From positions 7,750,001 to 7,814,000 of the forward strand of contig CM119386.1 of assembly GCA_051294905.1 (NCBI GenBank): a stretch of DNA of 64,000 bases, read 5' to 3'. Positions 20,486 through 59,409 of the stretch are shown piece by piece. The notes under the pieces were generated by a model that worked only from the letters and a program-made list of their open reading frames with translations, was not told the DNA's origin and did not search any database. This stretch comes from Botryllus schlosseri. Its lineage: Eukaryota. A program made the translations under genes and the position numbers. Each line of letters begins with the position of its first letter. Position 1 is the stretch's first letter.

Positions 20486-20576
20486 ATGGACATGAATGGC
20501 GATGGACCGGAAAGCGAGCATGTGAATGGTGACTATGCGGAAGGGGTTGCTGCTTCTGGGGAGATCAGCCCGAATG
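20486..20576 (+). CDS. Candidate alternative first coding exon (phase 1): MDMNGDGPESEHVNGDYAEGVAASGEISPN
   Basis: Acceptor tcttgtatcttAG| directly before ATG, only one open frame, donor G|gtatgt, phase compatible with 38242. Could instead belong to another gene. Confidence 0.5.
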
Positions 20577-21396
20577 GTATGTTAAATATATTCATCTTAC
20601 AACTGCTGCAATTCAAGTAGTGCCTTTCTGGGGTAAACTTGTGTGACGGTGACGTATTTTTGCTGTTACCGCCGCCATCGAAAATGTCGTTTCTGAAGCT
20701 TGGCGAGCATGCCCCAATGCATATGCAGATTTCGACTTTCATGGCGCCTTTGTCCTCTTGCTGTGTGCTGATTATTTGAGATTGATATCTTGCATATGTT
20801 CTAAATGTCCAACGTAATGTGCGATTACTTCCTATGTCTGAAGCAGTTCCAGCCTGCGTCGCGTTGTTGAGTTAGTCATGATTAATTCATTAATTACATG
20901 CCGAGTTAGTCGCGCGAATATGTGAGATGTTTATGAGTCAGAAGAAGGCCAACTGCCCAGTGGAAGGGTTTTGGCCTGAGTAACTAACAACAATCGCATT
21001 GCGCCGTCTAGCTTTCGCGTCTTGGCGAATTGCTTCTCTAGGTTTTGTCTATAAGGCCTCGGTTATATGTTGTTATCGGGCAGCGGTATCTCGAACCTGT
21101 GTCTAAAACAGACCACGATACGAGATTGATGTTATCCAGCGCTCGTCTATTGCAGGCAAATTGACAGTTTACTTCTGGTTTATCGAGAGCTTGAAGGGGT
21201 CGAGAATGTGTAAATGACCTCAATTGCCAGAATACACACGGCCAGAGTCGGGCTACAGTTTTTATTATCATGACGCCACTTGATTTGTTGCAGCGATTGC
21301 AATTACCCGCACTAGAATAGCTTGGGCTGTCGGCGATGTGTACTTTCGGACTTATGATTATTTTACGAGCGTGCCCGTTGTGGATTCTGGTACAGT

Positions 21397-21530
21397 GTCA
21401 ATTCCGACCAGTAGAAGCGGAGTTATGTAAGTTTTTCGTTGATAAATCGCGGATTATCACCGATCAAGGATAATCCGAGGATTATCATCGAAAAACTCAC
21501 ATAACTCCGCTTCTGCTGGTCGGAATTGAC
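21397..21530. repeat. 134-bp foldback inverted repeat (probable MITE)
   Basis: Arms of about 62 bp, GTCAATTCCGACCAG(T/C)AGAAGCGGAGTTATGT(A/G)AGTTTTTCG..., with few mismatches and a loop of about 10 nt. Confidence 0.9.
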
Positions 21531-22755
21531 TCAAATTTGTTTTGCAACGTCTTTGAAGACAGCTCAACAATTTCATGGGGTTGGCAGAAAAATTTGGAAA
21601 TTTTTTTTTTTTAATTTTCCATAATAAATTAAAAAATTTAATTGGGTCTGCGGAGGCCGTTACTGGTTGGAATCGAGTGAGATTTGGTGAGCAAGGTTTT
21701 CTACTGCAACCTGACGATTTAAGAGGTGACCGGCTTGAATCGAAAAAAAAAAGTTATTTTTGAACAGCCCTATGGTACACCTACCCGTTGCGTCGATGGC
21801 GTGCTTCACGCAATGAGCAAGCCTTTTCAGATAGGCACTCTGAGCCTATGATCCATTCATTCGTGGTTGTAACTGTGTTTATATGTGGGTGTCTCTTGTC
21901 TGCCGCTCGTTTCGATGGCACTTACGATCGCTTCGAACACTTTACTTGACCTCTCTTCGGTTTTCATCTCCAAATAAAAGTGAGTTTGGCTATTTCGTGA
22001 CCCCGCCACGGTGCGTATGTTTGGTGTTTTGACTCTCGGTTACGTTGGTGTAATTATCGGGAGTATCGTTGTGTTTTGTCATAACATGACCTGTACTGTA
22101 CTGCAGTTCAAGTGTAATTCCGTCTCGCTTTTAAGGCTGCATTGTATCTCCCGCTGATTATGTCGATAGGATATAATTGAATTGGAGGCAGTGCCGTTTT
22201 TTCAACGCTGATCTACCTGTATATGACCTTGCCGGTATTGTGTGTTTTACACGTCGTACGCCGTTTTATTCACTGGGTGTATTGTGTCAAGAGAAGGACA
22301 TTGGATTAACTTGGCACTCCTGCTTGACCCGGCCGCTATCATTACATTCCTAGGTGAACACTGAACGGAGGGAACGCTTAAGGTCGTAAATCATTCCTAG
22401 GCGTGCGCAATGTACGGGTGTAAATCGGCTGCCGTGGGCAAATACGACGGTCGGTTTGGGAAGCGATTTGCAAGTCGTTATGAATTTCCGAGAACGCTTG
22501 CAAATAGATTTTCAATGTGTACTGAGCTACTGACTGACGGTATTCTCAGAAATCCCGCTGGCACCGGCAGTCTGCGTGATTGATGTATTGAGATTTGGCG
22601 TCTGCGTTCAGATATATATGAGTGCGCCTTGTCTGTGTCGGTAATGGCAATGTACGGAAACGCGTACCGGAACCCAGCCTCGAATCCATTATAGTTTACA
22701 ATGAAACCTGATTATAGTAGTGTGGCATATCCGTCTTTATTGGCAAGGTCTATAG

Positions 22756-31331: not shown

Positions 31332-31467
31332 ATGGCGACCGCCGTTACCTCTCCTGACAAGCACGCCGGTGTTAGGAGATCTCTAGGCGCAAGAGCCATT
31401 GGGCGCATCAGAAAGTCGTTTTCTGTGGCCGATTTCAGCAGCTTGGAAACATACCGGTACGATCGTG
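31332..31467 (+). CDS. Candidate alternative first coding exon (phase 1): MATAVTSPDKHAGVRRSLGARAIGRIRKSFSVADFSSLETYRYDR
   Basis: ATG in gtaATGg context, open for 45 codons to a strong donor G|gtaagc. Splicing to 38242 gives ...YDR-DV..., like SynGAP ...PFR-DV... Confidence 0.65.
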
Positions 31468-38241: not shown

Positions 38242-38294
38242 ATGTCCACGAACGGTTTCAGCGAGGAGAACCGGCGTCGGGACCCGGCAGCAAG
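38242..38294 (+). CDS. RasGAP candidate exon 2 (phase 1 to 0): DVHERFQRGEPASGPGSK
   Basis: Strong acceptor ttacttttCAG| and donor AAG|gtaaat. Read in phase 1 it starts with DV, like SYNGAP1/RASAL2 exon 2, and ends in phase 0 compatible with 57607. An alternative reading from its own ATG (MSTNGFSEENRRRDPAA, phase 2) is also open. Confidence 0.65.
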
Positions 38295-39944: not shown

Positions 39945-40100
39945 AAGTAGCTCTAATTCCAATTATAATGTAATTTGGAAAAAGCTTAGTAGCTCTAATT
40001 CTAATTCTAATCTAATTTGGAAAAAGCAGTGTAGCTCTAATTCTAATTCTAATCTAATTTGGAAAAACTGTGTAGCTCTAATTCTAATTATAATCTAATT
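39945..40100. repeat. Second tandem array, unit of about 42 bp (TAGCTCTAATTCTAATTCTAATCTAATTTGGAAAAA...), about 4 copies
   Basis: Directly visible; same core and same orientation as 39265-39450. Confidence 0.9.
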
Positions 40101-41634: not shown

Positions 41635-42061
41635 CAGGGGTCGCCAACTCCAAACGGGTCGCGGGCCATTTTTCAAATTTCGTACAGGTCGCTGGCCGCA
41701 TGAATTCAATATTGAGATAAAATACGCCACATAGATTAATAACCATGTTATTAAAACTTTACGCCAGTACAACGCTCTCAAACATGGACGACGGGCATAG
41801 TTACCGCAATAGAAATAATCTTTTAATATAAAAATACAAATTAAACAAAAAATATTATTTTCATCACTTTCATTATATTTTTAACCATGAGCGGCGCAGG
41901 ATACCTGCCAACACTATTCAGCGCAAAAATCCTCGATATTGGGGTTAGCTAGACATGGTAGCCTACTTGCTGGAAAACTATCACCTCGTAAAGCTTGATC
42001 TTGTGGGGAAGCAATATACGACCTTAATGGCCGCATGCGGGCCGCGTGTTGCTGACCCCTG
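41635..42061. mobile_element. Older Charlie-like hAT MITE
   Basis: Ends CAGGGGTCGCCAAC / GTTGCTGACCCCTG with GCGGGCC subterminal motifs; TSD 5/8. Confidence 0.7.
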
Positions 42062-42229
42062 CTTTGGAACTTCAGTTTCATGTCCCGAATTCAATTCCTG
42101 GCATTTCCAATACCTGACCGTGTGATTTCTCGCGATTTAGCCAAGAATCAGCGTGGAAATCTATAATCTTTCGCAATTTGGCGTCTCAATACGCCTCCGA
42201 ACTTGATTTCGTGAAACGGCGAGTAGCGT

Positions 42230-42320
42230 TGGGACCCCGGGAAATCCCGATCCCGGGATCCCGGGATTTGAAGCAATCCCGATCCCGGGATTGGAAGCAA
42301 TCCCGATCCCGGGATTCGGG
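42230..42320. repeat. ATCCCGGGAT motif cluster, probable MITE end; similar cluster at 43030-43100
   Basis: Repeated AATCCCGATCCCGGGAT units ending in CAGCATCTA; partner end not found. Confidence 0.6.
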
Positions 42321-42405
42321 AACAGCATCTACCAAGGCTTATGTAGCGCCATATCTCTTATTTTGGTAATAAAGCAGTGTCACATACTCGGCTGATTGTC
42401 TAGAA

Positions 42406-42926
42406 CAGTGGCCTCAAACACGCGGCCCGCCAGAACTGTTTCTGTGGCCCACGTCGGCGTTTTGACTTTTCAAGCATTCGACAATATTAAACTCGAAAAT
42501 TTCAGATTTCGGATTTGAGAACTTGAAATTTCATTCTGAAACCACTCCAAAAACCTGAATCGCTATCACACATCAAACGTCCCCTAGCTGCTAAATTATA
42601 ATGCGACAGCTTTTACGATGACACGATTCATTTGTCGTCTCGCATGGTTTCTAACTGTCTATATAACTCCTTATGTCGCCAAATTATGCCAAGCACAACA
42701 ATATTTTCAAAAAATATTGAAAAATATGACTTTTTCGTGGCAACTGTGAATAATATTACAATAGTGTATTACATTTTCACAATGTGTATGGAATGCCAAT
42801 CTGCAAGGTCCTACAAAAAAGGCGTACTGGGAAATACATATTATACCCCTATTTGATGCTGCTGCCTGCCGCGTCATCAAAAACTACGAAATTGCCCCGC
42901 GATAAAATTGGAGTTTGGGACCCCTG
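42406..42926. mobile_element. Older Charlie-like hAT MITE
   Basis: Ends CAGTGGCCTCAAAC / GTTTGGGACCCCTG; flanks GTCTAGAA/ATCTAAAC resemble the NTCTAGAN target (5/8). Confidence 0.7.
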
Positions 42927-45900
42927 ATCTAAACGATGATACTCTTGATGCTCTTATGTTTTGCGTCAATTCAATATCACAAGGACTAAATGTTATTTGT
43001 GTAACTTGTATGTCTATTTTACTACTTTTCTAATCCCGGGGAATCCCGGGATTGAGGAGCGAAAATCCCGGGAAATCCCTATCCCGGGATTTCAAATTTG
43101 ATCCCGAAGTCCCAACCCTAATGGCGAGTCGAGGGCGGACGAAATCTGGAAATAGTTTTGTCATCTTCACGTCCAATTACGTGCTCTCGTCTCTGGTCGC
43201 TTGTTATCATAGCGCCGCGACAGCAAGCGTCGAATGTTATTAGTTGCTAAACGATCACACTAGTAAACATTGTTCCGCTGCGTAAGCAGAAACAAGAATG
43301 ATGATTCCAGAGGCGCGCACTTGTTCATTTATTACTGACTCGCAATATTAGACGATTGGTCCTGCAGTGACGACTATTTCTTCCCACCACATGGAATTCT
43401 ATTTAATAATACGATGTAAAAGTTTTTTCCGGATTCGGTTGTGGATCCGGGATCCGGACTTGAACTCCGTGTCCGGTTTATAATATCAAACACTCTCATC
43501 CTACAGTCCTACACCCACGGTCGTGCGCAATTAGAAAAACATTGGTAATTGTGAATCGGTTGCGTCTGGTCCAGTCTCTAGTGTAGAAGCTCAAATGTGC
43601 TCTGCTAACGAGTACATTACAGTGGACAAAGTGCAGTTAGCCAGGCTATTGTTCATCGGACTAAATTCTCTATTGCCAGCTAGCTTATTTGAAGCTGCTC
43701 AAGGTGATTGTAGGCTGTGATGTGTCTTTCCTTATGGTGCATATAGTATCGGCAACGCTGCGCTAACACGAGCCTTGCGCATGCGTCGAACGTCTGTCTG
43801 AATGGCGGCTGTTACGTCACACTAATCTAGATCATGCGCTGAGTTCGGTGATTCAATGTCGTTTTCGTGAATGGAGCCCGGGCTAAGTAATATCTTGTCA
43901 TGAAATGACGAGCACACATTCGATAGCGCGCGGGCCTTTTCCTGTTCTGTGTCGTAACAATGCTGCAGATGAAATGTACCGCTTAGCGTGCGCTTACGAG
44001 CGGCCGGATTAAGCCGCGCTGTCTTTATTTGGGATTGCGGCGGTTAAGTGGCGGTGTCATTAGGCGCGTTTAGCTATAATTTTAGTCTTTGTCGTGCCGA
44101 GATCAGGCTCGAGTATATGTTCAAATTCGGGATTTATAGAATTCGCTGGGTATTTATAAGTGGTTTGATGCGCACTGTCTCAAACAGGGTATTCGCAGGT
44201 ACACGACATCTGTTGTGTAGCCACGAGAAACAGTCGCAGTAATAAAGCGTAGTAATAAGTTAGGTCTTCCTTGGCGAGGCTAAAAAAACTAGGGCCAGTG
44301 TCCGACAATGTGCCTTTGTGGACGGATACAATCTGGTCGACTTACCAAGCTGTAAACCACGTCACGTTTCGGTGATGACGTGACGAAAACCCGCATTTTG
44401 GCTGAGCTGTTAGTAAATATGGCTGAGAAGTACATTCGTGATGCTTCAGTGTCTTGTGTCAGCATTGTTTGGGTGTGTTACTCCGTGTAGAGGCGCGCAC
44501 AGTTGTCACTAGAGATGATCAAGGAATCCCAAATTTGTACTCAAGTATAGGGAGAAGTAACCGTTTCCGAGTAAGTAAAAAAGTAAGTATTCTAGGCCTG
44601 ATTTCGCCTAGTAAACTGAAAACTGTCGAGTAGAAGTTGAAGTAGTCTACAATCCTAACCATTTGAGTAATTAGTAGCCAATTAACCTACTTTAGTGCTC
44701 AGAAAAAGTAAGAGTGCTTTGTTACTGATCACCTGGAGATCGCGTCGAAACTTTTTTCGCGCACGGCGCGGCAGGAGCCGGTCCTGTGTATTCCATGCTG
44801 CATTCGTCGAAAGTCCGTTCTCCCAGCGCTTCCTAGGTCGTCCATTCATCGCGCTTGTGATCGAGGCGCGTAATGTCGCGCTGAATAAACTGCTGGCAAA
44901 GACGGAAATTAGTAATACCGCGCGTGCTCCCCGCGAACCCCGTTAATCGAAGGTTACCGGATTGAAACTTGCAGAACCAGAGACCAGATAGCATTTATCT
45001 TTGTGGCGGTAGTAATTTAGACATGCGACCCGTCTAGTATTGGAAAACGCCGCAAAAGTTGTACTTGCGCGATCGCATTGTTCTGACGATGGGAACACTG
45101 AATACAGCGTATATAGCCTGGCTCCATACGACAATGCATCGTTCAGCGCCGGCGTTGGAAGTGTGCGGATGTGCTCATTCAGAAAAGTGTGGCTCACCCG
45201 ACGCGGGGTTATAGACACAGTCGCTCATAATTCGAGTCCAACTTGCAATGAACGGAACGGGAATTGATGTAGGCCAGAGGTGGCAGGCGCGTCTGTGCCG
45301 CGCTGGAATTGGCTACTTCAAAATCCAGCGGAAGTGGGCCGACTTGCAACGGGTGTACGGTTACAGATTGCGGAGTTGTTAGAAACGTAAAGCGGGTGGA
45401 TGTTTGCCGCGTTTTTGATGCCGCTGTCGTGCGCGGGCTATGTTGCTTTTCGCCGATTCACAGGCAGGCGTTCCTATGGATGTTCAGGAATTTGCCGTGG
45501 CTATAGTTAACCTATCGATTGACCCGGTTATGTAATTCGCAGATAATATGACGCATTTTCAAGTTGAATCAGCAATGGAATTACACTTGAGAGAGATAGA
45601 GAGACCGCGCTAACAGTCTAGTTGTGCATTGTGCATGGCTGGTTGGTCTCGTACGACGTCATAATCACAATTATTTCGAAGTGTATTAGTCGTCAGCTAA
45701 GTGAAATATATCAGGAAGTCGGTAGTACCGTGTTTTTCGACTGTGTTGAGGAATCTTGAATTGTAAATAGGTTGTTGGCGAGTTAGGAATTTCACATTTA
45801 CTTCACAACTTGGTACCAGAGCTGTGCCTTCGGTGGTGGGGCTCTTGGAGCATTAATATTTAGTCGACCCCTTGGCTCGTGACCGGAAATGCCATCAATA

Positions 45901-46351
45901 AAGGTAGTAGCGGATCGAGAACGTTGCTGACCGTGGTTTAAAAGTAACGTACGCGCGTTTCGTTACCGTCAGCGTTTCTCTGTTTGATCATAATACGCCC
46001 AATACAGGATATCTCCTTGACGAAGGCCGGTTGCGGCGAATGTAATCTCTCCCGACTCTCAAAAACTGATGCAGTAGCCTGCAGCTGGAGTTAGCGCGAG
46101 GCCAACGGTGAATTGCATCAAAGGCAGCTTTTACGTGACTACCAGTTATTAATTTTGCTTGAGGTGCGCTTCTGTTAGATCGCGATTAGGTCGGCCGATA
46201 GCTTGGGAATTGGCAGATGTGTGGGGTGTGTATTTGAACAACTGCGCCGCCGTTGTGACATTCCGTGGGTGTGTTCTGATAATGGAAAAGTGTGTGCAGC
46301 CTGTGCTGTTTGCGGTATGCGTTATCGCGTATCGGCTGATCAAGATGAACA

Positions 46352-46379
46352 GTTGAACATGAACATGAACATGAACATG
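46352..46379. repeat. (GAACAT)n microsatellite, about 4 units
   Basis: Directly visible. Confidence 0.85.
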
Positions 46380-47048
46380 CTATTGCATCGATGCTTGCAG
46401 GCAGAGTGTAGAAGCAATTACCTAGCTGTGCGATGACAATTCTTATCAGAATGCTGACGGTGGCGTGTTTAAGTGTCTTTTGTCGCGATTTTGTGATTTT
46501 AGGAGAGTCTATGGTCGGTTGAGGCTTATAGTGGAATTTCGGCGGACCGAAATATTGTAGCATCGATTCTGAAGTGTTTTCGAATCTTCTGATTGGATTG
46601 CGCTGAGTAGAACATAGGTGTAGCGGCCAATACTTTGTGAGATTGGACGTAGTTGGTTTATTTAACCATCGCTATTGCCTTGTCACACGTCGAGAATGCA
46701 TGTATTGGCCTCGTGTCGAGGGATGATAGCAGCTATCAAGTTCGCGGTATTGAAGTTTCTCCGTCGCGGCCGATAATGATTTTAAATTGGGCGGCGCAAT
46801 AGGAAGGATGACATAATGTGAACAGTCCTCACCTCACATTTTGCGTTTATCTTATGACGGGCCGATGCAGCCCGGGATGATACACAGATTTAGTTCGACT
46901 GTATTATTTTTGGAACTAACGGTATTGGTTGCTTTATTTGAGGCCGCATTCAGCGCACAAGTGTACGTCGTAGATTTGTTTAACCGCCACAGAGTGGTAA
47001 TATGAAGTGTATGTATGGTCAACAATTATCAGGCACATAGGTAATTAC

Positions 47049-47255
47049 CAGATACGGTCAACTCAGTCATTATTTAAGTAGAAGTAGAAGTCGTAATTTT
47101 CTACTCTAGAAGAAATAGTAATTTCCAAGAACTATTCTAGGCCCAAAATGAGGTGTAAGTAGCCTGAAATTAAACTATTTTTAAACCAGCGCAAGTAGAC
47201 TAACTTTCCTCCTAAAAAGTAGAATTACTTAGTCACTGACCAGTGACCACCTCTG
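47049..47255. mobile_element. hAT-type MITE (CAGAGGTGGTCACTGGTCAGT end family)
   Basis: TSD GTAATTAC/GTAATTAG (7/8); the same right end recurs at about 29235-29257 and a related one at about 39070-39088. Confidence 0.7.
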
Positions 47256-47275
47256 GTAATTAGGCATGCCGATAC

Positions 47276-47599
47276 CAGTGAGGAGCGGATATTGATTTCT
47301 GAGAATCCGAAAGACAGTCGAAGTCTGTGAGGATCTATCCGTCCTAATCTGAACCAAAAAATCCGCACGAATCCGAATAATGTCGCCCAGAATCTGAATT
47401 GAATAACTTCTCCGAATAATCCTGATTATACATATGAGCAGAGTAGTCTTTACAAAGGCTAAGGTTAGGGTTAGCTGGTTTCTATTTGCTTCGACCTTTG
47501 GCAAACATCCGAAACAAAAGCTGCAATAGAATCCGAATCCGACCTCAAAATTGTGCAAAATCCGGTCCGAACTCTACCCGGTTCCGAACTCTATCACTG
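47276..47599. mobile_element. hAT-type MITE with ATCCGAA subterminal repeats
   Basis: Ends CAGTGAGGAG / CTCTATCACTG; TSD GCCGATAC/GCCGACAC (7/8). Confidence 0.8.
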
Positions 47600-48865
47600 G
47601 CCGACACACTTTGATAGCGCTGTTCTAGTGTTCTGGATCCTCGGTGTATAGTTCTCCGTACTCGGAAGGTCGGAAGTATTGTGAACGCAGGATGAAAATA
47701 TCGCGATTTCCCTTGATGGATTAAAAATGGGAGTCAGGATTGTGTGTTATGCGGATGAATGATGTAGGGATGTAGCCATACAAAGATTCCCTATTTTCCG
47801 CTCTCTTAACGTTTCGATTTTTCCATCGGTTTCGAGCGGCACGTTTTCGTTTTCCGCCGGGAATCGACCTCAATGGAGCATGTAGTCTTGGTAGTCTGCA
47901 TCAGCTTTCCGCGTAAACCTGCGACACGTGTCATTGTATTCATTCGTGGCAGTCGCCGAGCTACGCCACTCGTTAAGAAATCAGTCACGGTGAAAGTTAG
48001 GGTTTCGGCGAACATTGTGGTTGGGTTAGGGGAAAGCGAAATATTCCACGAAGTTCGGATGTGAGTAGCTCCGCCGACACTGAAACCGTACCTTCAAACC
48101 GTTTCGCACGAAACCTGCACATCACCGACCGATATACAGTGACTATGTCTGTCGCACATGGCGATTTTGTCACCACCCCGAAGACGTTTGAACTTGCGAT
48201 GCGCACGACTCTAGCGTGTCATATGCTGGGTAATCTATGATTCAACAGATCGTTGTATATCCTGCTGATGGCGAACGCAATTTTCCACTGGTTGTGACCA
48301 ATTTCGATCGATTAGAAATGGCTCCGTTCGGAACCGGTGTGAGTGCGTAATTCGTTTCACTCAAGAGAAGGAAAGGTTGGTTCAGGTTCAATGTCAGTTG
48401 TCTATACGTTATTTTACCGTGTTGGACACTGTTTTGAAGTAGGCTGCCTGTGCAAAGCGGACTGGTCAAACCTGTGACTGCTCCGTCGGGTAAAGGCCCA
48501 TGTGTCTATTAAACTTCCAGTAATAGAAATACATGCGCGCGATTCCATAATTTGTCTGATCGGTGTTTTCTAATACGTCGCAAGTGAGCTTACGTGGTGT
48601 ATTGTACATTGTCTATCCCGATAGTGCGTTGGATCCGTAGGCCTGTTTGCGATTCAACAAAAAATATTGCGTTTTCGGCAGTTTCGAGCTTTCGTTTCCA
48701 CGCTTCATCTTACAGACATAACGCATATGAGATAGACAGCAATTGAATCATGACGTTACTTTCATGTAACATGTTACTTTTCGGGCCAATTTACATTGTT
48801 TTGTGTCTGTTCCATGCGTGTAGATCTGCAGCAGGGTCACGCCCCTGTGTAGTTAGTGTAGAACC

Positions 48866-49168
48866 ATGGCAGCCTTCGAGACAAGGGGCCAATATATGCG
48901 CAAGAAGAGCTTTGAGGCCGAAGACGGGCTGGGATTATCTGGATCCGCGCGGAGATATTTCGACACCGGCGGCCTGGCGTCGATACCGGACAACAGCCCG
49001 TTGCCCTCGCCCACCGAGCCGTACGGCCGGCCCACTTCGCGGTCGGTGTCCAGCCGGGACGCGCTGTACGTGCGGAAGAACCGGTCTTTGCCCCGTACGA
49101 ATTCCGATTCCGGGTTTTCGTCGCATAAAATGAATATCGCGGAGGTTAAGAGGAATAAGTCGCTGAAG
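48866..49168 (+). CDS. Candidate alternative first coding exon, 101 aa (phase 0): MAAFETRGQYMRKKSFEAEDG...RTNSDSGFSSHKMNIAEVKRNKSLK
   Basis: GC-rich coding-like block, accATGg Kozak context, upstream acceptors at 48823 and 48861, donor AAG|gttggt (phase 0; alternative G|gtatgc after 49172). S/R/P-rich disordered composition as in family N-termini. Confidence 0.7.
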
Positions 49169-49456
49169 GTTGGTATGCTACCTGTTGTCGATCCAGACTG
49201 GCGTAGTTGGTCGCCGAAGATGCGTTCTTACCCCTCAAATTGTGCCACACACATTGTTATGCCATTTCCTTGCGTTACATGACGATGAATCCGATACGTA
49301 ACCTCTTTGTTATTATTATTTTTCCGTTCTGGTTACGTCACTGCGGAAGCGTTGATATGAACTCGCGATCACGATTACAGCAAAATCTCGATGTGGTCAG
49401 TTACGATTACGATTACATGTAAAAGTAATCACGATTATTAGCGATTACATGTAGAT

Positions 49457-49792
49457 CGGTGGCTCTTAACGTTTATCAGCCCGGGTAACCCTTGCGGCAT
49501 TCTGCTGACATACATGGAACCCAAGACTGTCGCTGGGTTATAAAATCGAAAATGTACATCATCACTCATGGTGCACAAAATGAACTATGCATCAGCAGAG
49601 TGTTCAAAGATCAAAACCGTTAAATATGATTTTCATCGTGTTTTCACGCACAACAAAACATTGTAATGAATATATTTATTGCGAATCTGCTGTTCCCGTT
49701 CAGACACTAGAAATGCGAGACTTCGCCTCAGAAAGTGCCATCGTATTCTTCGGTGGAAACGCAACAGCGGGAAGCCCGGTTGAGAACCACTG
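49457..49792. mobile_element. Charlie-like hAT MITE
   Basis: Ends CGGTGGCTCTTAAC / GGTTGAGAACCACTG; TSD ATGTAGAT/ATTTAGAT (7/8). Confidence 0.8.
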
Positions 49793-51213
49793 ATTTAGAT
49801 TTCTACAATGAGCGCATATTAAAAAATAACAGCGATTGAGACGAGGCGACATCATGAAAATTTAACTACAATTACTTGTAAGTCATATGTCCATTGCGTG
49901 ACTTCGTCGCGCCCACCAATTTTCGTTCTGACTCAAGCTACAATATGATACATATAATATATAGTCTGTAGATTCAAATTATGAGTAAAGAGTAGCGAAA
50001 TAACGATTCGAACAGCTTTGTGAGTCGATGTAATTTGTTATGACGCAATCAATGAGCACAGCTAATACTTAAATATGTGTAGTGATTAGCAGCGAAGCTC
50101 ACAAATCCGATGTTCCCACCGTCAATAATGTGATAAGCCATTTGGGGTACAGAACTTCAGAATAACACGAAACAATAACTTCATAGTGTTAATTTATTCG
50201 CTAAAAGCTTTCGACTGACTCTCATCAGGAGCGAACGTCAGTAATAGGGTGAAATCAAATTCGAATGTCGAAATTCTGTATGTGATACAACACATAAACT
50301 TATGTTTACAATTTATGTCAAGGCCCTTGTAAGACTAAAGACTTTTGTAATCGTTTCTTTAAAATGAAATCGATTACCTTTACTTAAACATACTGTAATC
50401 TTTGTAATCGCATATGATTACAAATCATGATTACCCCATTCAGGCTACAGATCAAGTTCGACCTATGACCTTGGATGTGCGCCTACTGTGTATGTATGTA
50501 TTCTGAGCGCGAAGCTCCCGCGAACCGAGTTCGTTGAATCTCAAACGTACACCGACGGGCTGCATTATAGTGTAATAATGGAGTGGGAAAATACCAGTCA
50601 ATCGCCAGCCAAATTCCGACCCCATAATGACATGCGTGCGATGATAAACCCGTGCGGTGTATGGCTTCTAATTCAGGTGTAATGGGAGGCGTTGATATCC
50701 CGAAATGAGACATGACGCACACGCGCTATAAAGCCTAATTGCACGGTATCGCATTCCCACAGGCTGTTTGGATAGCTATTTCTGCGTGTGTCGCAGGTGT
50801 CTCGAAAACTCCTTGTACGCACTCGCTGTGAGCGACGGGAAGTGTGAATTGAATATGGTTAACGTCCGTTCATTAGTGTCGCGCAGTTACAAGTCCACTT
50901 CTGACTTCGTATTATCCTTGTAAGCGAAAAATCGCTGCCTTATAGAAACCTTTTTTCTTTTTTGAGTCGAAGGGTTTATTTTGAAAATTTGTGATTCAGA
51001 TAACGGATATTGCTGCTGCTTGAGTTCAATTGCGTATGGCGCTCGGTCTACTCTTTGAAACATCGCAATGTTAGATTTTGCCCCTTCGCAAACCTGTCGC
51101 TCACCAAGGTTGTTTTAAATGTTAGAGTTGAAGACTGTCTATTACAACCGAATGCCAATGATCAAGTGTCAGAATCGAACGCCTTGCATTACTTTTCTGT
51201 CTGTTACTAATGA

Positions 51214-51306
51214 ATGGACAGTGGACACGATAGCGGCCTGGGCACCGGCATCTTGTCGCGGAAGACTCGAAATAACTTGCTTCCGCAAATGCGACTGTTA
51301 ACGCCG
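51214..51306 (+). CDS. Weak candidate alternative first exon (phase 0): MDSGHDSGLGTGILSRKTRNNLLPQMRLLTP
   Basis: ATG, 31 open codons and a weak donor CCG|gtttgc in phase 0; contains DSGHDS. Confidence 0.3.
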
Positions 51307-52478
51307 GTTTGCGTCATACCGAAACCGCCCAACTTTGCGAGATCATTTACCCAAGCAAACACGCATATTCGGCTTAATTTATTCAGCATATCGATGGATG
51401 AACGACTATTCTGAAAGCCTTATAGAACAGAAGTGAATATCAAAGCACGGAAATAAACGCATCGGAATAAGCGGCATAGCCCATGTCTTTAAACTGTTAG
51501 CTGGGAGACCAACCCGCCCTTTTCAAGTTGCCTGCCAGACTTCGTTCAACACGAGCCTGTACTTTAAATGCGTCCCCGTCTCTACGTTTTGATCAGTTGA
51601 CGTTCTTCGTTTGATCGCGGTCTGTGTTGAAGTAAGCTTCGATTCGAATCAAGTATTCTAGTATGGCGTCGCATATAGTAAAACAATTGAGATGTGTTTC
51701 TTCTACATAAGGTAACGAAGTATATATAAATATAATTTTCGACCGTGCCAGCTCCTTATTATCCAAAATCATTTCGTTTTTCATATCCATCACCATGATA
51801 CAGCCCTTTTTGACAATGCTGCGAATCGGTTAAGTCACAGAAACGACATTTCCACGAACATGCGTAGCGCTGTGCTGAGTGTCCAATGCCCCCCACTCCG
51901 GGAACAAAGTATGGAAATAATACTTCTCGTTAATAAAACATCGTTATTTGTAGAGTTACCTGATTCCGGTATTCAAAAAAACTTCGACATGGATTTGTTA
52001 CATTAGCAAATTTTCTACTACTGTCCGAGTCACGTTACGTAATTGCGGTAATTGCAATCCATATTAGGATGTCGCTTCTCGCTAGTATAAAATATTTTCT
52101 CTGTTCATTGGAACGCACTTTGTATGAACGCCGTCAGTGTTGATTTATACTTATACGTATGCCGAACAATTTGTAGTTAACTATGAACATTGTGATGACA
52201 AAGGAGGGATTATGAGTACACACTTCTTGTAGCTCGCTGCGGGAATTATCAACGGAAGTCCAGCCGCTTTCGAAGACAGACGAGCGGTCTGTTCCACCGT
52301 TTCGCGGTCCCGCTCCGTCATTACCGAAATGCCCGAGAGAAATTACCGTTTAATTGCACCCTACACTGCCCGTAAATTGTGCCCAGGAGGCAAGGCTCCG
52401 CGGCGTTACTTCTACTAAACGCGTATCGCGAATATTGCACGAACACCGCTACTGTTGGTCGGTTGCCGGTTAGCCGCG

Positions 52479-52640
52479 ATGGAGTGTTGGGACGAGGTAG
52501 CGCCGTCTGTACGCGGGTACTTGCCTTTCGCCATGAGAAACTTTCAGTCCTGCACCATACCGATACCGTACCTGTCGCGCGGGCGGTCCGGGAAATATTG
52601 CTTCCGCAAGAAAGAGAGGTCGTACTCTTGCGCTTATGAG
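52479..52640 (+). CDS. Candidate alternative first exon (phase 0): MECWDEVAPSVRGYLPFAMRNFQSCTIPIPYLSRGRSGKYCFRKKERSYSCAYE
   Basis: In-frame ATGs at 52479 and 52533 (gccATG), donor GAG|gtaatg in phase 0. Confidence 0.5.
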
Positions 52641-55160
52641 GTAATGACTTTGTTGTTTCGTAACAGACGCCTGGTATTGGCGTTGGCATTATCGCGTTCT
52701 GTATGACTTTGCTGCTGATGATGTCTGAATCGTGTGATTCACAGCGCGAAGGGCAGTGACGGATGTTGTGTTGTTACTGGTAATGCAGAAAGCCCGACTA
52801 TACTGGGTTTTCTAGGGTAAGCGTGTTTAGAGGCGTCAAGTATTCGGAATAAACTATATCTCCGGGCTTGTTATGAGAAGGAGTGGGCTCAAAGGTTCGA
52901 GGGTCAGTTTTAATAATTTGTTTCGAGTAGCGAGGGTCGATAATTTCGAGTAATTAAGTATACGCCTTCTTATCAATGGTAGTATTTTTATCTTCTCAAA
53001 ATATAGTTTCAATGCTGTATTGTATATGCACGGCTGGGGCCTGTAAAGCTTGGTTGCCCGTAGTTCAGCAATTCAGCAAAGAAAAACTTGTACGAGGCTA
53101 CTATTATTATTCATGGAGCGACATTTCTAACGTTACTGTTATGACGTCATAATATGCGGTACTCGTCTTCCGATCAAACTGGATGATCGATTTGACCTTG
53201 ATTGGATGTTTTGTGTCATATATCTAAAGTAGGTACAAAATATTGCATTCGACGAGTTCAAGTTCGAATTATCCGCAGCGTAAATGCTAGGGCTGGCTAC
53301 ATCGATTATGTATCTGATTTGTTTCGGAATTAAGCATACGTGTGCCACTTATTATGACCTCATACCTAGAAGAATTGGCGGTTTAATGCAGGCACAGCGA
53401 AATCGTGGCGCTTAATATAGAAAAAAACTTCGCATTTCGCAGTCGAAAAAGTCGTTAGAGGGCTTAATTGTCGTTTCACGAACAGATATATCGCCTATCG
53501 CTACATACATTAGGTTTGGTCAATGTGTTAATGTCACGGCGTATCAAAGTCCCGAGGCTCCTTCGGAGAAAAGAAAGCGTCTAATCAGCCGATAAGTCGC
53601 GTAGATAATGTCATAATTCTTAATCGCAGCCGCGCGCTTTACGGTTCGCCGGCAGAAGTTACACGCGCGGCAAGACCCGAAGCGCATTGATTGCGGTTTT
53701 ATGGAGATTTTTATTATGCGTTCCGCGTCAATTATTCAGTCCGGGCATCTCTTCAGACCGAATGAACTCTGCATCTCTATACTGAAATTGCAGACCGCTA
53801 ATGGATGGGTCGATGGTCTCTATGCGATGATGCCTGCGCCTTTAATACTGGCGGTAATTCTACAATGTGTGTGCGACTCTGCGTAGGATCACAAATGTGC
53901 CTGGTGCTCGAACAGAAGCTCAATCGTATCTGTATTGAACGGTAGTCTCGCGCGCGGCCGAGTGAAACACACATTTTGCGACAGCCGTGTCCGTGATCCG
54001 TTATTTTGTATTCATCCTCGATATGTAGCGAGGTTGCCGAATCGAAAATTGCAATTGTAGGTCGAAAAGCGGATAATGGTAGAACCTCTTACTCATCCTA
54101 TAGGAATACTTTGTTTATTGAGGCTTGGGATTGCTCGCTGCGTGCGGTTTTTGTGTCCTGCTGCGTGCATTACGTATTGTTTTCTTGGCGGTGCGTCATG
54201 CCTTCGCATGTAATCGGTCCTGTTTGCGAACGATTTTTGATTTGTGTTTCGCGTTTGTCAGTGTTGTGATGACCGGGCCTTTGTTAGTTACGTTATGGCC
54301 GAACTGAAGCATAGCCGCTATGACTCTTAGTTTGAATAACTGTATCGAATGTTACCTTCTCTGTAGAATTAATTTTTTGAGCGACTATTTGGCGAGGGCT
54401 TTGATTGTGAAATAACCGTGTGGTATTCGTCGTGGTAGCGAACCCAGAAGGTGTAATTGGGCCGTGCACACTGTATATTGAGCACAAGACAAGACAGCTG
54501 GACTTGAGTCACAATTATTTTCTAAATTCGAGCCCGTACAATAGGCTTGGTCCGTCCGACTTACACCTCTGAGCAGACCATGATCACAGTCCTATAGGAC
54601 CTAGCTCAATGTTGGGCTACGAACTCGTTTGGCGGAACGGTGTACTTTATTGCCGACATGACTTTGGTTTGCCTGAGCTTTACGAAATGTCTACAGGTTA
54701 AGCTTTCTTTTATAAGAGTTCTGAAAAATAATATTATAAAGGCCTGTATTACGATGAGACAGCCAGAGGGTATAATACGCCTACCCCTTAATTGAAAAGC
54801 ACGTTGTGACGTCATTTGAGAGTTTAGTCGCAATAGAGTGTTTGCATGCCATGAGGATGGACTACTTGAGTAACGAACTGAGGTTCTCAAGTAGAAATAA
54901 AAATCACGTACATTTTTAGTCAAGTAGCCAGAAACCTTCAGTCCTTCGAAAAGTAGAAGCACTTCGTCATTTACCACGTATGGTAATGAATGCATTGCTT
55001 GTGAAATGAGTTTCCAATTTGGCCATTTACCCGTCGCTTGACACAATCCATAGTACTGTGTATGCATATATTTATACCAACTTAGCGCTCCAGTTGGGAC
55101 CTGCATATCTTCCTTGATAATTATTTGATTCCGCTGCGAATCGGCTTTGGCGGCTGATAG

Positions 55161-55295
55161 ATGCTTCGCGAGTTTCCGTCAACCGCCTCTCGTCCCGGCC
55201 ACGCCTCCCATTCACGGCCGCGTGACGTACGCCCCCCTTCCGTCAATCAGCACGGTTCGTTCGAACGATGCATCGTCACTAATACCCTGTCGCCG
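55161..55295 (+). CDS. Candidate alternative exon (phase 0): MLREFPSTASRPGHASHSRPRDVRPPSVNQHGSFERCIVTNTLSP
   Basis: tAG|ATG start, 45 open codons, donor CCG|gtaatg in phase 0; S/R/P-rich. Confidence 0.45.
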
Positions 55296-56410
55296 GTAAT
55301 GAGAAGGGCATCGCCATTGCCGAGTTGTTTTAATTTCGCCTTCCGTTATTCGATTTTTACGTCACTAACTCATTGAAAACATCATTTTCCTTCCGTAAAC
55401 AAGAAGCATTTCGACGCGTTATCGCCATTGCGGGGGCACAGATAATCCCCGCGACCCGACAATGAAAATATGACCGCGCACCGCAGGCTTAATGAGATCC
55501 AATCGACTAGGGCTGTATTCGTAGCGTGTCTGGCTGTAATCAAATCATCGCCGCCTTTGCTGGTATCACGTGACAAGATGTTATAGTTGTAAATATAGTT
55601 TTTGATGATCTCACTGCGGTCTGAAATCGGTTAGCCGAAAGTGTAGAATTATTTATTATTCGCTACTCGCGTACGATGTATGATATTCTGCCTCAAGCCG
55701 ATAGCTGTAAAGACCTTGTTTTTGTGTCGACGCGCGAAGTGTTTTTACGAATTTGAGTGACTTATTAAATATTCGCGATGCAGGCTTTCTTCGTAGCGTG
55801 CAGATGTCGTTTTACGACGAAAAGTTAACTTTTACAGGGCTTTATCGGCAGGCGAGGGAGGCTTCTTTGTGATAGGCTGTTTTTTGCGTTTGGTTCGTTT
55901 ACGAATTTGAGTAATGCGACGATTGTGTTATAGAATTTATGTGTCGCTTGCCAGTAAGGGCGACAGTGTCGGTACAAAAGACTTTGATTGGTTCGGCGGA
56001 ATTGATTTCCGGTTTTCTTAAGTAGCGAATGAAATCATGGGCTTTACTGTTCAATACAGATACCCACAAGACGCGTGTATAGACTATTATAATATTTCCG
56101 CGCGTGGTCGCTGAAACAAAAAGTTTTCATAGGCAGGGCTACTATGTTTGGTGCTGTTGTTTTTCAAGAGATTGACGACTCGCGCAGTGATTAAATGGAT
56201 CTGCTGCCTGTCGGTAAACAAGGATTGCGCATCATATTGCGCGCAACGTCATCATAATAGTATGCATTTGGTTATTGTGTCCCTGCTATTAACATATCTA
56301 TGTGTAGTAAGTATCTATGTAAGCTATAAGCGTCTTGATATAGTTTCGACGCTCATCGTTATCGTGAGCTGCTGTTATTGAAGAATTAGGATTATCTTCA
56401 TGGTTTTCAG

Positions 56411-56450
56411 TTTGGCTGATCGTGTCAACATGACTGCTGGCAAAAAGAAG
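56411..56450 (+). CDS. Candidate 40-nt exon: (L)ADRVNMTAGKKK, with ATG at 56430 (MTAGKKK), phase-0 end
   Basis: Acceptor ggttttCAG|, donor AAG|gtaaaa. Confidence 0.45.
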
Positions 56451-57606
56451 GTAAAATCCCCGTTTTTCGCGAAGATATTCTCCTTTTCGGGATTGTGTGT
56501 TTAGGGATATTATCAGCTGGCGCGTCGGAAGCAGTTGTAATTGTACGAAGTTTGCGGAGGGTTCACCTGCTCGTGTATCTCCGTTTTGACGTCATTTAGT
56601 GTTTGCGTTGCTTATTATTTTGTGAATGTCCTACCGTAAAATGGTCTGGCGTTGTAGCACTTCATGAACCGGCCCGCGTTTATATGAGTTACTTGGCCTG
56701 TGAGATAGTACTCAGGTTTTCGATACAGGTGAGGCTGTAGCGTAAAGTCTAGCGTCTGTGTTATAGTATTCTTTGCTCCACTATTGGCGAATCATTGACG
56801 CATGCGAAGGTCACGTTCGTTGTTAGAAGTTTGTTTTGATGTATCGCTAACGCTCGGTCAAGTGCGTTGACGCATTACATCGAAACCCGATACGGACGCT
56901 GTGTGTAGTTGTTTCGACGCGCTGGTATAGGCTAACGATGTGTGCCCAAAACGGTCCGTTTTGATGACGGAATTGATATGGTGAAACCAGACACAGGCTG
57001 GCGGTGACGTTTGGTCGGCGAAGACAGTTAAAAATAGATGCTACATTTTAGGAGTCGGTAATGATTTCAATAACGACCTGTCCTACGGAATACTTCACGA
57101 AAGAAGTTGTGTGGTTATATCACCCGCGCGGTATAGAAGTTGCTTTTCTGCGCCTGACCTGTAATCTGGAACGACACATGTCATCATATCATTGTGACGT
57201 CATAGTTAATCACGAGTTCGTGTGGTCCCAAACACGAGCTTGAACTTATTAGGGTCTGGAGAAGTGTGTTTTTATCCCGATACGCAATATATTGTGTTAT
57301 TTGCACTCAACTCGGAAGATCGGAATTGTGGATTGTATGTTTCTAATCAAACTTATCGCCGTTGTGATCGTGATTGGCTTCATCAACTGCAGACATAGTT
57401 TACGGTACGAAATTTAGCAGCGTTTAATAGCCGATGCACGGCTTGTCGCTGCTACGGCGAAATTCAATCGGGTAATTTTTGCCACTTGCTATGACGCAAT
57501 CGCGCACATGCTACAGTGATTACTTTGTTCTGCGTGCCGCTCGGGCTATTCCCAATACGCTAAAACCTGCAATAGAACGCATTGACACCAGCGCCTTGTC
57601 TTGCAG

Positions 57607-57701
57607 AGCTACATACAGAGGAAGATCACGCCGGCCAACCGCTTGGCCAGATCCGCCCGGATGACGCCTGGAAAGGAAAACGTACCGTTTGCGTCCACCT
57701 C
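57607..57701 (+). CDS. DAB2IP/SYNGAP1/RASAL2-like: RasGAP shared exon (phase 0 to 2): SYIQRKITPANRLARSARMTPGKENVPFASTS
   Basis: Acceptor gccttgtcttgCAG|, donor CTC|gtgagt. The 95-nt exon is open and its phase-2 end fits 62425; same phases and position as the vertebrate GFLSRRL exon. Confidence 0.8.
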
Positions 57702-59338
57702 GTGAGTTGTTTTTTACGTCATTATTGGCTTGGCATCGCGCGTCAGCGACACTTCGTGAATAGACTTTGCAGGTCGTGTCGTCTTAAAGCTGGCACACTT
57801 TCGTATCATGGTTAGATGCGTTAATCGATCGCTAGATTGTTTTAATATTATCCTGCGCTAGGATCGGGCGCATTGCGAAACTGCTACTGCGGTATTGGTT
57901 TTAGTTGTGAGCCGTTTAGGTTACTAGTTACAGGGCGGTAAGATAGTGAATCTGGCTACGTTTTTGAAGAAGCTGTTTCTTATGCCGGACGGGTTTATCT
58001 TGAAACACTTGACAAAGTCGACAAAGTAAGTGTGGCGGTACGTTTATGGCCAACGACAAACGAGTGTGATAGGGTTTTATGACGGTTTATCTGCTAAGTG
58101 CAGTGCTGCGAGCTTATATTGCTTAGGCGATGTAAAGTCAACTACAAGAAGTTTTGTCATTAAGGTATAATAATAGCCTGACATTGTTTTCCAAAGGAAT
58201 TGCCCTGGTGAAATGTAGGAAATTGTAGCTTTCAAAAGTAGAATCTCTTGAAAAGTAACTTTGTGATATGTGGTCACTGGTCATGGATTAACTTCATTAA
58301 CTCCATTATGAATGTCTTTGTGAGTTGTGACTACCGACGAGCATTCAGTTGGTAACAGTGCAGGGGCAGTCTAGAATATCTTGCTATGGCAATTATTTTA
58401 AACTCTGAAAATCGATTTTTAATGTTTGGTGTTCGGCTAGTAATTAGTACTTTGTCATCAACATACAAGTCCACTTTCAAGACTATATTCATGGTTGATT
58501 TATACATTAACCCAAGACTTTTTTCATGTGTAAAAAAATTCAAGTCTTGCTAAAATATAATTATTGAGGGTCTTCGTGTTGAAAGCAGTCTTTGAGTTTT
58601 GCATCACCCACCATTCACCAACCATCTGCTTTCAATATACTGGCAAATCTTGAACCAAAGATACCAAAGTAACCTGGTAGTGTGGCCACTATGTTGGAGA
58701 ACAATATTATGTTCATTTCCGTGATTGCGTCTGGCAATAAATCCCGTTCGACATATATCAGATAGAGGTGTTACCAGATTGAGAAAACGCTTGCTCAGGC
58801 AATCAACAACAGATGTGGATGCTGGTATTCTTGAAAACTGTCACCAAGCGTGATACCAATGTCAAAGCTCTGCCAATGCAGTTTTCATTAGACCGAGGAA
58901 TTTTCCGTGAGAATTTTCCTTGCGTCTCGGTGGAATGACACGTCTTGAGGTGTTTCCAGACGCCGTTGATACGGAACAGGAAAGCGTGACTCATCTTTCC
59001 TATAGCTGCATGCGAGTCACCTGCTTGCACGACTCTGCTTAGCACGTAACGGTATATGAAGGAAGGACTATGATGGTGACGCATGGATATTACCGAACAC
59101 GTCCGCTAGCGCAATGTATTGCGAATATGGTAGTGTGTCAGTGTTTTATACGATAGCGAGGTGCGGGAAGGTGATTATGCTGTGTTTGCCGGGTTTGAGA
59201 CGGTCCTTTTGCTGCTCGGGACTGCTATGTTTCGGGTGAGGCATTTAAAGTTGTCTGAATTCGTAGGCGGGCGTCGTTTATTTTTGTGCTTTGAGTCTCT
59301 CGATTGGCCGCTAACAATCATAGCTGTGAGACACAAAC

Positions 59339-59409
59339 ATGTTGTTGTTTCCTGTCCCTCGCACCATTAATGCAAGCAGCATTGGCCTTCGTTGCACTGC
59401 AAATCATCT
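59339..59409 (+). CDS. Candidate short-isoform first exon (phase 2): MLLFPVPRTINASSIGLRCTANHL
   Basis: aacATG, 23 codons plus 2 nt to a consensus donor |gtaagt; phase 2 fits exon 62425 directly. Confidence 0.45.

What the first reader, a model, noticed from the sequence alone, without database searches (positions are those of the whole stretch)
20486..59409. Up to eight alternative N-terminal exons feeding one SynGAP/DAB2IP-type RasGAP
Seen: eight ATG-led open segments each end at a GT donor whose phase fits a downstream shared exon. Phase 1 (20486, 31332) fits 38242; phase 0 (48866, 51214, 52479, 55161, 56430) fits 57607; phase 2 (59339) fits 62425. Known: vertebrate SYNGAP1 and DAB2IP use a few alternative promoters giving different N-termini. 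Inference: this invertebrate gene may carry a larger promoter array producing unrelated N-terminal tails on one PH-C2-GAP core. Most of these exons are invisible or mis-framed in the ORF track, so annotation probably misses them. Some candidates (especially 51214) could be chance.
Basis: partly seen in the sequence, partly recalled or inferred. Interest (0 to 1): 0.7.

Follow-up and report, generated by a model that had tools for sequence, protein, structure and literature searches.

The report
Sea-squirt RasGAP gene with alternative first exons
The window holds the 5' half of an ascidian SynGAP/DAB2IP-type RasGAP gene that really does use several alternative first exons, but only two of the eight proposed ones are supported, and the same arrangement is already annotated in other sea squirts.

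Summary
The gene is real. It is an ascidian SynGAP/DAB2IP/nGAP-type RasGAP, closest to Styela clava LOC120344922. Its PH exon starts at 62425 and its GAP domain lies about 5 kb beyond the window.

All listed segments do start with ATG, stay open and end before GT. That alone is chance level: 477 such ATGs lie on the + strand of this region and 409 on the - strand. The three acceptors also cover all three phases, so the phase fit carries no information.

**Supported as first exons:** 48866-49168 and 31332-31467, by homology to annotated N-termini of three ascidians.

**Internal exons, not first exons:** 20486-20576 and 38242-38294. An RNA contig shows the junction 38294->57607.

**Unsupported:** 51214, 52479, 55161, 56430 and 59339. 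There is no homology and no junctions, contigs run unspliced through three of the donors, and one allele breaks the 55161 frame.

- a PH-completing start at 15229-15259 plus 18261-18376
- the conserved short "ML..CC..CF" exon at 59177-59235
- an RNA-supported exon ending at 58025

Styela, Ciona and Clavelina each have 9-10 annotated N-termini, and C. elegans gap-2 has nine mRNAs. The idea is right but not new.

The parts
15229..15259 (+). Type C first coding exon: 10 codons (MDIHGLLQVC) plus 1 base, donor GTAAGT, phase 1.
   Evidence: It is the best of 1142 ATG/phase-1/GT candidates on both strands of 114 kb against the Styela and Ciona MEIQGWINVC / MDMRGWLAVC peptides (z 6.0, next 3.9). It is collinear with Styela exon L014:10001-10030. 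Sequence read.
18261..18376 (+). Type C second exon (DIRGVPAHQLSCGQ...MLDPDQ), the N-terminal module of the split PH domain. Phase 1 in, phase 0 out.
   Evidence: tblastn against Styela X3 gives 68% identity, E 1.6e-15. HMM E 3.5e-21. tblastx against the Styela locus E 6e-15. The same motif occurs in vertebrate nGAP/DAB2IP proteins. The acceptor TTTCAG and donor GTGAAT were read.
20486..20576 (+). It is most likely an internal exon, the counterpart of the Styela 'FFSEGDNQ...' exon shared by types B and C. Phase 0 in, phase 1 out.
   Evidence: It is preceded by TATCTTGTATCTTAG. It is in frame after 18376 and before 38242. It has the same position and phases as Styela L014:29071-29181. There is no sequence homology and no RNA evidence here.
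31332..31467 (+). Type E first coding exon (..GARAIGRIRKSFSVADFSSLETY..), phase 1, donor GTAAGC.
   Evidence: HMM of the Styela, Ciona and Clavelina type E peptides gives E 7.7e-7. tblastn against the Styela locus gives E 2e-5 at the collinear place L014:40220-40294. It is the top of 670 structural candidates, z 8.9.
38242..38294 (+). Shared internal micro-exon of 53 nt, phase 1 in and phase 0 out, read in frame +2. It is not a first exon.
   Evidence: A contig of run X1 joins 38294 to 57607; its loose end matches 38263-38292. It is collinear with the Styela shared exon L014:55434-55520. The one SNP seen is synonymous in frame +2.
48866..49168 (+). Type D first coding exon (..RKKSFEAEDG..EVKRNKSLK), phase 0, joins 57607.
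   Evidence: HMM E 7.6e-16. tblastn against the Styela locus E 3e-17 at L014:63519-63824. The exon end falls at the same residue as in Styela, Ciona, Clavelina and Phallusia (..KRNHSLK | .FLQ.KI.P).
51214..51306 (+).
   Evidence: The donor GTTTGC is weak. There is no Pfam match, no match to any annotated ascidian N-terminus and no match to the Styela locus. It was not covered by the read laying.
52479..52640 (+).
   Evidence: No homology. No joint from 52640. Contigs of X1, X2 and X3 run unspliced through the donor at intron-level depth, and X23 gave no reads there.
55161..55295 (+).
   Evidence: No homology. A contig of X1 runs through the donor unspliced. It carries +CTCT behind 55186 and a 4-base deletion at 55255, which put a stop into the frame. 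This is a single contig at depth 3.
56430..56450 (+).
   Evidence: No joint from 56450. A contig of X1 (56283-56592) runs through it unspliced. It is too short for any other test.
57607..57701 (+). Shared exon (SYIQRKITP..MTPGKENVPFAST), phase 0 in, phase 2 out, donor GTGAGT. It contains an internal ATG at 57661.
   Evidence: Junction 57701->62425 is seen in 6 raw RNA reads of X23 and in contigs of X2 and X3. Homology to the '.FLQ.KI.P...GKEN' exon of the three annotated ascidians. A contig of X3 begins at 57538, 69 nt upstream, which may be a start site for an MTPGKEN form like Styela X10.
57772..58025 (+). RNA-supported alternative exon ending at donor AAA|GTAAGT and joined to 62425. The ATG at 57982 gives 14 codons plus 2 bases, in frame with the PH exon. 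The 5' end is unknown.
   Evidence: Contig record 15 of X2 covers 57772-58025 and continues with 80 letters of the 62425 exon. Reading frame checked. It rests on one contig and has no homologue in Styela.
59177..59235 (+). Type J first coding exon (MLCLPGLRRSFCCSGLLCF plus GG), donor GTGAGG, phase 2.
   Evidence: It is the best of 1508 ATG/phase-2/GT candidates on both strands of 114 kb against the J peptides (z 4.9). It lies in the expected 4.7 kb interval, with the same length, phase and ML..CC..CF pattern as Styela, Ciona and Clavelina type J. No RNA evidence.
59339..59409 (+). It starts 104 nt after the type J donor.
   Evidence: No homology. Its codon-usage score is negative. The conserved J exon lies just upstream. 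It was not covered by the read laying.
62425..62590 (+). First common exon of the core: a linker plus the start of the C-terminal half of the PH domain.
   Evidence: PF25321 PH_RASGAP positions 70-101. 73% identity to Styela. RNA junctions from 57701 and 58025.
63134..63957 (+). Further core exons inside the window: the second PH exon (63134 to about 63232) and C2-domain exons (about 63582-63722 and 63784-63957). The gene continues to about 14.3 kb beyond the window end.
   Evidence: PF25321 positions 98-125. tblastn against Styela and Ciona. PF00616 RasGAP at G000:C16:7818926-7819150.

Best explanation
The window carries the 5' two-thirds of one ascidian gene of the SynGAP/DAB2IP/RASAL2 (nGAP) RasGAP subfamily. 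The gene runs from about 15.2 kb in the window to about 14 kb past its end. About 47 kb of 5' region holds a collinear series of alternative first exons, each presumably with its own promoter. All converge on the same PH(C-half)-C2-GAP-coiled-coil core.

Four routes are recognisable:
1. Type C: 15229-15259 + 18261-18376 + 20486-20576 + 38242-38294 + 57607-57701 + 62425. It supplies the N-terminal module of the split PH domain, like the long vertebrate forms.
2. Type E: 31332-31467 + 38242-38294 + 57607-57701 + 62425.
3. Type D: 48866-49168 + 57607-57701 + 62425.
4. Type J: 59177-59235 straight to 62425. This is a short Cys-rich head on a form without the PH N-half.

RNA adds an exon ending at 58025 that joins 62425, and a possible start just upstream of 57607.

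Shown: the exon homologies, the phases, and three RNA junctions. Inferred: that each first exon has its own promoter, and that the N-termini differ in membrane or partner targeting. Both inferences rest on analogy with SynGAP A/B/C and C. elegans gap-2.

Five further candidates look like chance ORFs in introns.
For: - **Family and taxon.** PF00616 and PF25321 hits. The core is 70-80% identical to Styela clava LOC120344922 and 50-75% identical to Ciona, Phallusia and Clavelina.
- **Relatives.** 9-10 distinct annotated N-termini in each of three ascidians, falling into shared types.
- **Window homologues.** Types C, D and E by HMM, with E from 3.5e-21 to 7.7e-7. C1 and J are the top structural candidates.
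- **Collinearity.** The exon order is identical to the Styela locus L014.
- **Frames.** All phases give one open frame through each route.
- **RNA.** 57701->62425 in 6 reads plus 2 contigs, 38294->57607 in one contig, and 58025->62425 in one contig.
- **C module.** It is shared with vertebrate nGAP/DAB2IP proteins.
Against: - No read or contig was examined outside 52401-58400. The junctions 15259->18261, 18376->20486, 20576->38242, 31467->38242, 49168->57607 and 59235->62425 therefore rest on homology and phase only.
- No start-site data exist here, so 'own promoter' is inferred.
- Types A, B, F and H of the relatives were not found. The array may be smaller or more diverged here.
- The J match is moderate (z 4.9 against 4.2 for the runner-up).
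- Absence of junctions for 52479, 55161 and 56430 comes from four runs at low depth: 17 raw reads, and contigs that drop rare forms.
Confidence: 0.8

Rival explanations
1. One reading: all eight ATG-led segments are alternative first exons with their own promoters.
For: All have ATG, an open frame and GT. 51214, 52479 and 55161 score in the top 2-6% of ATG-ORFs for codon usage, no worse than the verified exons. Lineage-specific first exons exist in relatives, for example Styela type G.
Against: - Hundreds of equal segments arise by chance, and the phase fit is automatic.
- 20486 and 38242 directly follow splice acceptors and are in frame with upstream exons.
- There are no junctions from 52640, 55295 or 56450, and contigs run unspliced across them.
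- An allele breaks the 55161 frame.
- None matches any annotated ascidian N-terminus or the Styela locus.
- A conserved J exon sits 104 nt upstream of 59339.
Confidence: 0.03
2. At least one of the five unsupported candidates (51214, 52479, 55161, 56430, 59339) is a real, lineage-specific, tissue-restricted first exon that the four runs sampled here did not catch.
For: Power was low: only about 6% of X23 was read and 17 reads laid, and 51214 and 59339 were not covered at all. The codon scores are not bad. The region around 57.5-58 kb does show unannotated starts and exons, so the locus is promoter-rich.
Against: In the relatives only type D joins the 57607-type exon directly.
Confidence: 0.15
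3. The ATG at 20486 is used as a start codon. Transcripts from a promoter between 18376 and 20486, the place of the type B first exon in Styela, would have a non-coding leader spliced to 20486 and begin translation at its first codon.
For: The exon opens exactly with ATG. The type B coding first exon was not found in the 2.1 kb where Styela has it. This would leave a leader-only version.
Against: There is no RNA evidence. The ATG may be just an internal Met of the type C route, which is in frame.
Confidence: 0.2

Closest known systems
Styela clava LOC120344922 (RefSeq isoforms X1-X10; also Ciona intestinalis LOC100178487 and Clavelina lepadiformis LOC143469466)
   Same: It is the orthologous gene. 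It has the same core, the same shared exons, and the same first-exon types C, E, D and J in the same order along the locus, with the same splice phases.
   Different: Types A, B, F, G and H were not found in the window or in 50 kb upstream. The shared micro-exon is 33 nt shorter and reads in a different frame over its first part. The exon ending at 58025 has no Styela counterpart.
Mammalian SYNGAP1 N-terminal variants A, B and C from alternative promoters (McMahon et al. 2012, PMC3621422)
   Same: Different start regions give different N-termini on one core. The long forms have a complete PH domain, and a short form lacks part of it. Types C and J here parallel these.
   Different: There are three N-terminal classes in mammals, against 9-10 in ascidians. 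The unique peptides are unrelated except for the PH N-half.
C. elegans gap-2 (Hayashizaki et al. 1998, as reviewed in PMC3771449; PMC11168454)
   Same: It is an invertebrate SynGAP-family RasGAP. It has 25 exons and nine mRNAs from alternative start sites and promoters with tissue-specific expression, and isoform-specific exons have behavioural effects.
   Different: It is a nematode gene with trans-splicing. No homology of its first exons to those here was tested.

Membership tests
SynGAP/DAB2IP/RASAL2 (nGAP) subfamily of RasGAPs | RasGAP catalytic domain (PF00616) | tested here: met
   48.8 bits, over the cut-off, at G000:C16:7818926-7819150, 4.9 kb beyond the window on the same strand. The exon is 75-80% identical to Ciona and Styela.
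SynGAP/DAB2IP/RASAL2 (nGAP) subfamily of RasGAPs | Subfamily-specific PH domain (PF25321 PH_RASGAP) directly before a C2 domain | tested here: met
   PF25321 positions 70-125 at 62504-62599 and 63131-63214, over the cut-off. C2-region exons at 63582-63957 align to relatives that carry PF00168.
SynGAP/DAB2IP/RASAL2 (nGAP) subfamily of RasGAPs | Split PH domain whose N-terminal module (GW..D.+G.P.H..SCGQ...W..K+C) lies on separate upstream exons | tested here: met
   15229-15259 plus 18261-18376 match this module in ascidian and vertebrate nGAP/DAB2IP proteins. Pfam itself does not score this half, so calling it 'PH N-half' rests on the literature (PMC3621422).
SynGAP/DAB2IP/RASAL2 (nGAP) subfamily of RasGAPs | C-terminal DAB2P_C / coiled-coil region (PF12004) | tested here: inconclusive
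   tblastn of the C-terminal parts of Styela and Ciona hits window-extended coordinates 76638-78014. Pfam was not run on these exons.
Multi-promoter genes with alternative N-terminal first exons (SynGAP A/B/C, gap-2 type) | Several mutually exclusive first coding exons, each with its own ATG, spliced to common exons in frame | tested here: met
   Four homology-supported first exons (15229, 31332, 48866, 59177) have phases that fit the common exons. RNA junctions were shown only for 38294->57607, 57701->62425 and 58025->62425.
Multi-promoter genes with alternative N-terminal first exons (SynGAP A/B/C, gap-2 type) | Separate transcription start sites or promoters for each first exon | not testable with these tools
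   There are no CAGE or 5' RACE data. CpG observed/expected is high everywhere (median 1.15), so it gives no promoter islands. One contig starting at 57538 is only a hint.

The most novel reading that the evidence does not exclude
The ascidian RasGAP first-exon array is an old, collinear module set shared across the deep ascidian splits. This lineage has remodelled it in three ways. It lost or scrambled types A, B, F and H. It frame-shifted the shared micro-exon relative to Styela while keeping the overall frame. If so, the locus would be a small natural experiment in the turnover of promoter-specific protein heads.
Probability: 0.3. Interest if true: 0.35.

Novelty: new member of a known kind. 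Interest (0 to 1): 0.25.

Why it matters
The main value is for annotation. It gives a corrected 5' gene model for this ascidian's single SynGAP/DAB2IP-type gene: its start at 15229, four conserved alternative heads, two shared micro-exons and one new RNA-supported exon. It also shows that 'ATG + open + GT + phase fit' is not evidence in a 40 kb intron-rich region. Biologically, ascidians keep about ten N-terminal heads on this RasGAP, including forms with and without the complete PH domain. That makes them a compact model for how promoter choice sets the targeting of a synaptic or Ras-pathway GAP. But this is already visible in RefSeq for three ascidians, and in the literature for mammals and C. 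elegans.

Tried and rejected
- **Bacterial-type promoter/terminator scan.** It is irrelevant to an animal gene.
- **CpG observed/expected as a promoter marker.** The whole region sits above 0.85, so there are no islands.
- **Codon-usage log-odds trained on 976 core codons.** The verified exons reach only the top 10%, so the test cannot separate real exons from chance.
- **Pfam on the candidate peptides.** It found nothing. Pfam also does not score the N-terminal PH half, even in the Styela long form.
- **Search for a protein of the window's own species.**
- **Searches for types A, B, F, G and H.** I used HMMs over all open frames from -50 kb to +63 kb, whole-genome protein searches, interval-restricted alignments, structural candidates and motif patterns. 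None was found. There is only a weak G-like lead at 22410.
- **tblastx of the window against the Styela locus.** Only the C2 and D exons pass.
- **A J-like 'CSCFDAL' stretch at 56871-56927.** I rejected it because it has no ATG in frame and the wrong phase.
- **Repeat check of 51100-53000 and 54900-56700.** The candidates are single-copy, so they are not transposon fragments.
- **Pfam on long antisense ORFs in the introns.** Nothing passed a cut-off.


Full report
**Observation**

The three acceptors (38242, 57607, 62425) each follow a pyrimidine tract ending in CAG.

The pattern is what chance gives. Between 20000 and 62400 there are 477 ATGs on the + strand, and 409 on the - strand, that lead at least 7 open codons to a GT. 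With GTRA the counts are 222 and 202. The three acceptors take phases 1, 0 and 2, so every donor fits one of them.

**What the gene is**

The window is G000:C16:7750001-7814000.
- PF25321 (PH_RASGAP) positions 70-125 lie at 62504-62599 and 63131-63214.
- PF00616 (RasGAP) lies 4.9 kb beyond the window.
- Open frames with homology run to about 78.0 kb in extended coordinates.

A search of 1.84 billion representatives with the GAP exon gave Ciona intestinalis 'probable Ras GTPase-activating protein' as best hit. The closest relative found is Styela clava LOC120344922, 70-80% identical over the core exons. The window is therefore from an ascidian, nearer to Styela than to Ciona. No protein of the window's own species was listed.

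**What relatives show**

The 90% clusters of the Styela, Ciona and Clavelina proteins hold 21, 19 and 13 members. Cut at the conserved R.LH.SIL motif, they fall into 9-10 different N-termini per species. Most of these recur across the three species:
- type A (long, ..LLCG..)
- type B (MFR...KKFFS)
- type C (M..GW..C DI.G.P.H..SCGQ)
- type D (RRKS.EAEDG...EVKRNHSLK)
- type E (..R.QRI.S..DFRDL)
- type F (.F.FVSTR.GIRRS)
- type H (..CFN...L..TLPR)
- type J (ML..CC..CF, joined straight to the PH exon)
- forms starting at internal ATGs

The Styela genomic locus (L014) gives this order: C1, C2, B, the B/C second exon, A, G, E, F, H, a shared 86-nt exon, D, the shared '.FLQKKITP' exon, J, and the PH exon.

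**What is in the window**

Profile and tblastn searches find three types:
- type C2 at 18261-18376 (E 3.5e-21)
- type E at 31332-31467 (E 7.7e-7)
- type D at 48866-49168 (E 7.6e-16)

The shared exon is at 57607-57701.

Two short exons were found by asking for ATG, the right length, the right phase and a GT, and then scoring against the relatives' peptides.
- 15229-15259 (MDIHGLLQVC + G | GTAAGT) is the best of 1142 candidates, z 6.0.
- 59177-59235 (MLCL...CC...CF + GG | GTGAGG) is the best of 1508 candidates, z 4.9.

Both lie in the interval predicted by the Styela order.

The order in the window (C1, C2, 20486 exon, E, 38242 exon, D, 57607 exon, J, PH exon) is the same as in Styela. Every route reads through in one frame:
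- 15259 (phase 1) to 18261
- 18376 (phase 0) to 20486
- 20576 and 31467 (phase 1) to 38242
- 38294 and 49168 (phase 0) to 57607
- 57701 and 59235 (phase 2) to 62425

These frames were read. The C1+C2 module also matches the N-terminal motif of vertebrate nGAP and DAB2IP proteins. The literature treats that motif as the first part of the PH domain, which only the long SynGAP forms have (PMC3621422).

**RNA**

One call on 52401-58400 was allowed, with one raw RNA-seq run (X23, about 6% read) and the contigs of three other runs.

It showed these junctions:
- 57701 joined to 62425, in 6 reads of X23 and in contigs of X2 and X3.
- 38294 joined to 57607, in a contig of X1. Its overhang matches 38263-38292 with one change, which is synonymous in frame +2.
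- A new junction from 58025 (AAA|GTAAGT) to 62425, in a contig of X2 that covers 57772-58025. The ATG at 57982 is in frame with the PH exon.
- A 918-nt contig of X3 that begins at 57538 and runs through 57607-57701 into the PH exon. It could mark a start site for a form beginning at the internal ATG 57661, like Styela X10.

It showed no junction from 52640, 55295 or 56450. Contigs of X1-X3 run through these donors unspliced, at the depth of the surrounding intron. X23 gave almost no reads between 52401 and 57400.

The X1 allele carries a 4-base insertion and a 4-base deletion inside 55161-55295, which create a stop codon. This rests on one contig at depth 3.

**Verdict on each candidate**

| Candidate | Verdict |
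|---|---|
| 48866 | Real first exon (type D) |
| 31332 | Real first exon (type E) |
| 20486 | Most likely the internal exon shared by the B and C routes. It sits directly after an acceptor, in frame after 18376, at the place of the Styela second exon. Its ATG could still serve as a start behind a non-coding leader. |
| 38242 | Shared internal micro-exon |
| 51214, 52479, 55161, 56430 | No homology to any annotated ascidian head or to the Styela locus, and no RNA support |
| 59339 | Lies in the intron, 104 nt after the conserved J exon, and has a negative codon score |

**Limits**

- The junctions outside 52401-58400 rest on homology and phase.
- Start sites are not shown.
- The negative RNA result has low power, and 51214 and 59339 were not covered.
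- Types A, B, F and H were 'not found with these queries', not shown absent.

**Comparison with what is known, and novelty**

Alternative promoters giving different heads on this RasGAP subfamily are described for mammalian SynGAP: variants A, B and C, with and without a complete PH domain (PMC3621422). They are also described for C. elegans gap-2: nine mRNAs from alternative start sites with tissue-specific promoters, and isoform-specific exons with behavioural effects (PMC3771449, PMC11168454). RefSeq already lists 9-10 heads for three ascidians.

The window therefore adds a new member of a known kind, with a corrected gene model.

Noticed in passing
window 38242-38294 versus L014:55434-55520: In frame 0 the micro-exon reads MSTNGFSEENRRRDPAA. 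That resembles the Styela peptide ESTNDGRRRRPPPDD better than the frame that keeps the gene open (+2: VHERFQRGEPASGPGSK). The DNA alignment suggests one extra base near the exon start and a 34-base shorter end. This could be a lineage-specific frame shift inside a linker, or an assembly slip. The one SNP seen in RNA is synonymous in frame +2.
   Followed up: partly
window 57772-58025: A contig of run X2 joins a previously unlisted exon ending at 58025 (donor GTAAGT) to the PH exon. The ATG at 57982 gives a 15-residue head in frame. Styela has no counterpart.
   Followed up: partly
window 57538-57606: A 918-nt contig of run X3 (depth 17) starts 69 nt upstream of the 57607 acceptor and continues spliced into the PH exon. 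X23 also has a read in this bin. This is either a start site for an internal-ATG form or retained intron.
   Followed up: no
window 22410-22540: An ATG-led open frame (MYGCKSAAVGKYDG...) is the top structural candidate against the Styela-only type G head (z 5.2) and lies in the expected interval, but its donors are poor. It is a weak lead only.
   Followed up: no
window 51746-51988: A short dispersed repeat has at least eight copies of 70-79% identity on other chromosomes (C5, C8, C10, C11, C12, C13). It does not overlap any candidate exon.
   Followed up: no
whole window and 30 kb downstream: CpG observed/expected has a median of 1.15 in 400-nt windows, with no depletion in the gene body.
   Followed up: no
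window 47232-47558 (-): A 109-residue antisense open frame inside the big intron has a sub-threshold match to DUF5739 (E 9e-4, 19.6 bits against a cut-off of 25).
   Followed up: no
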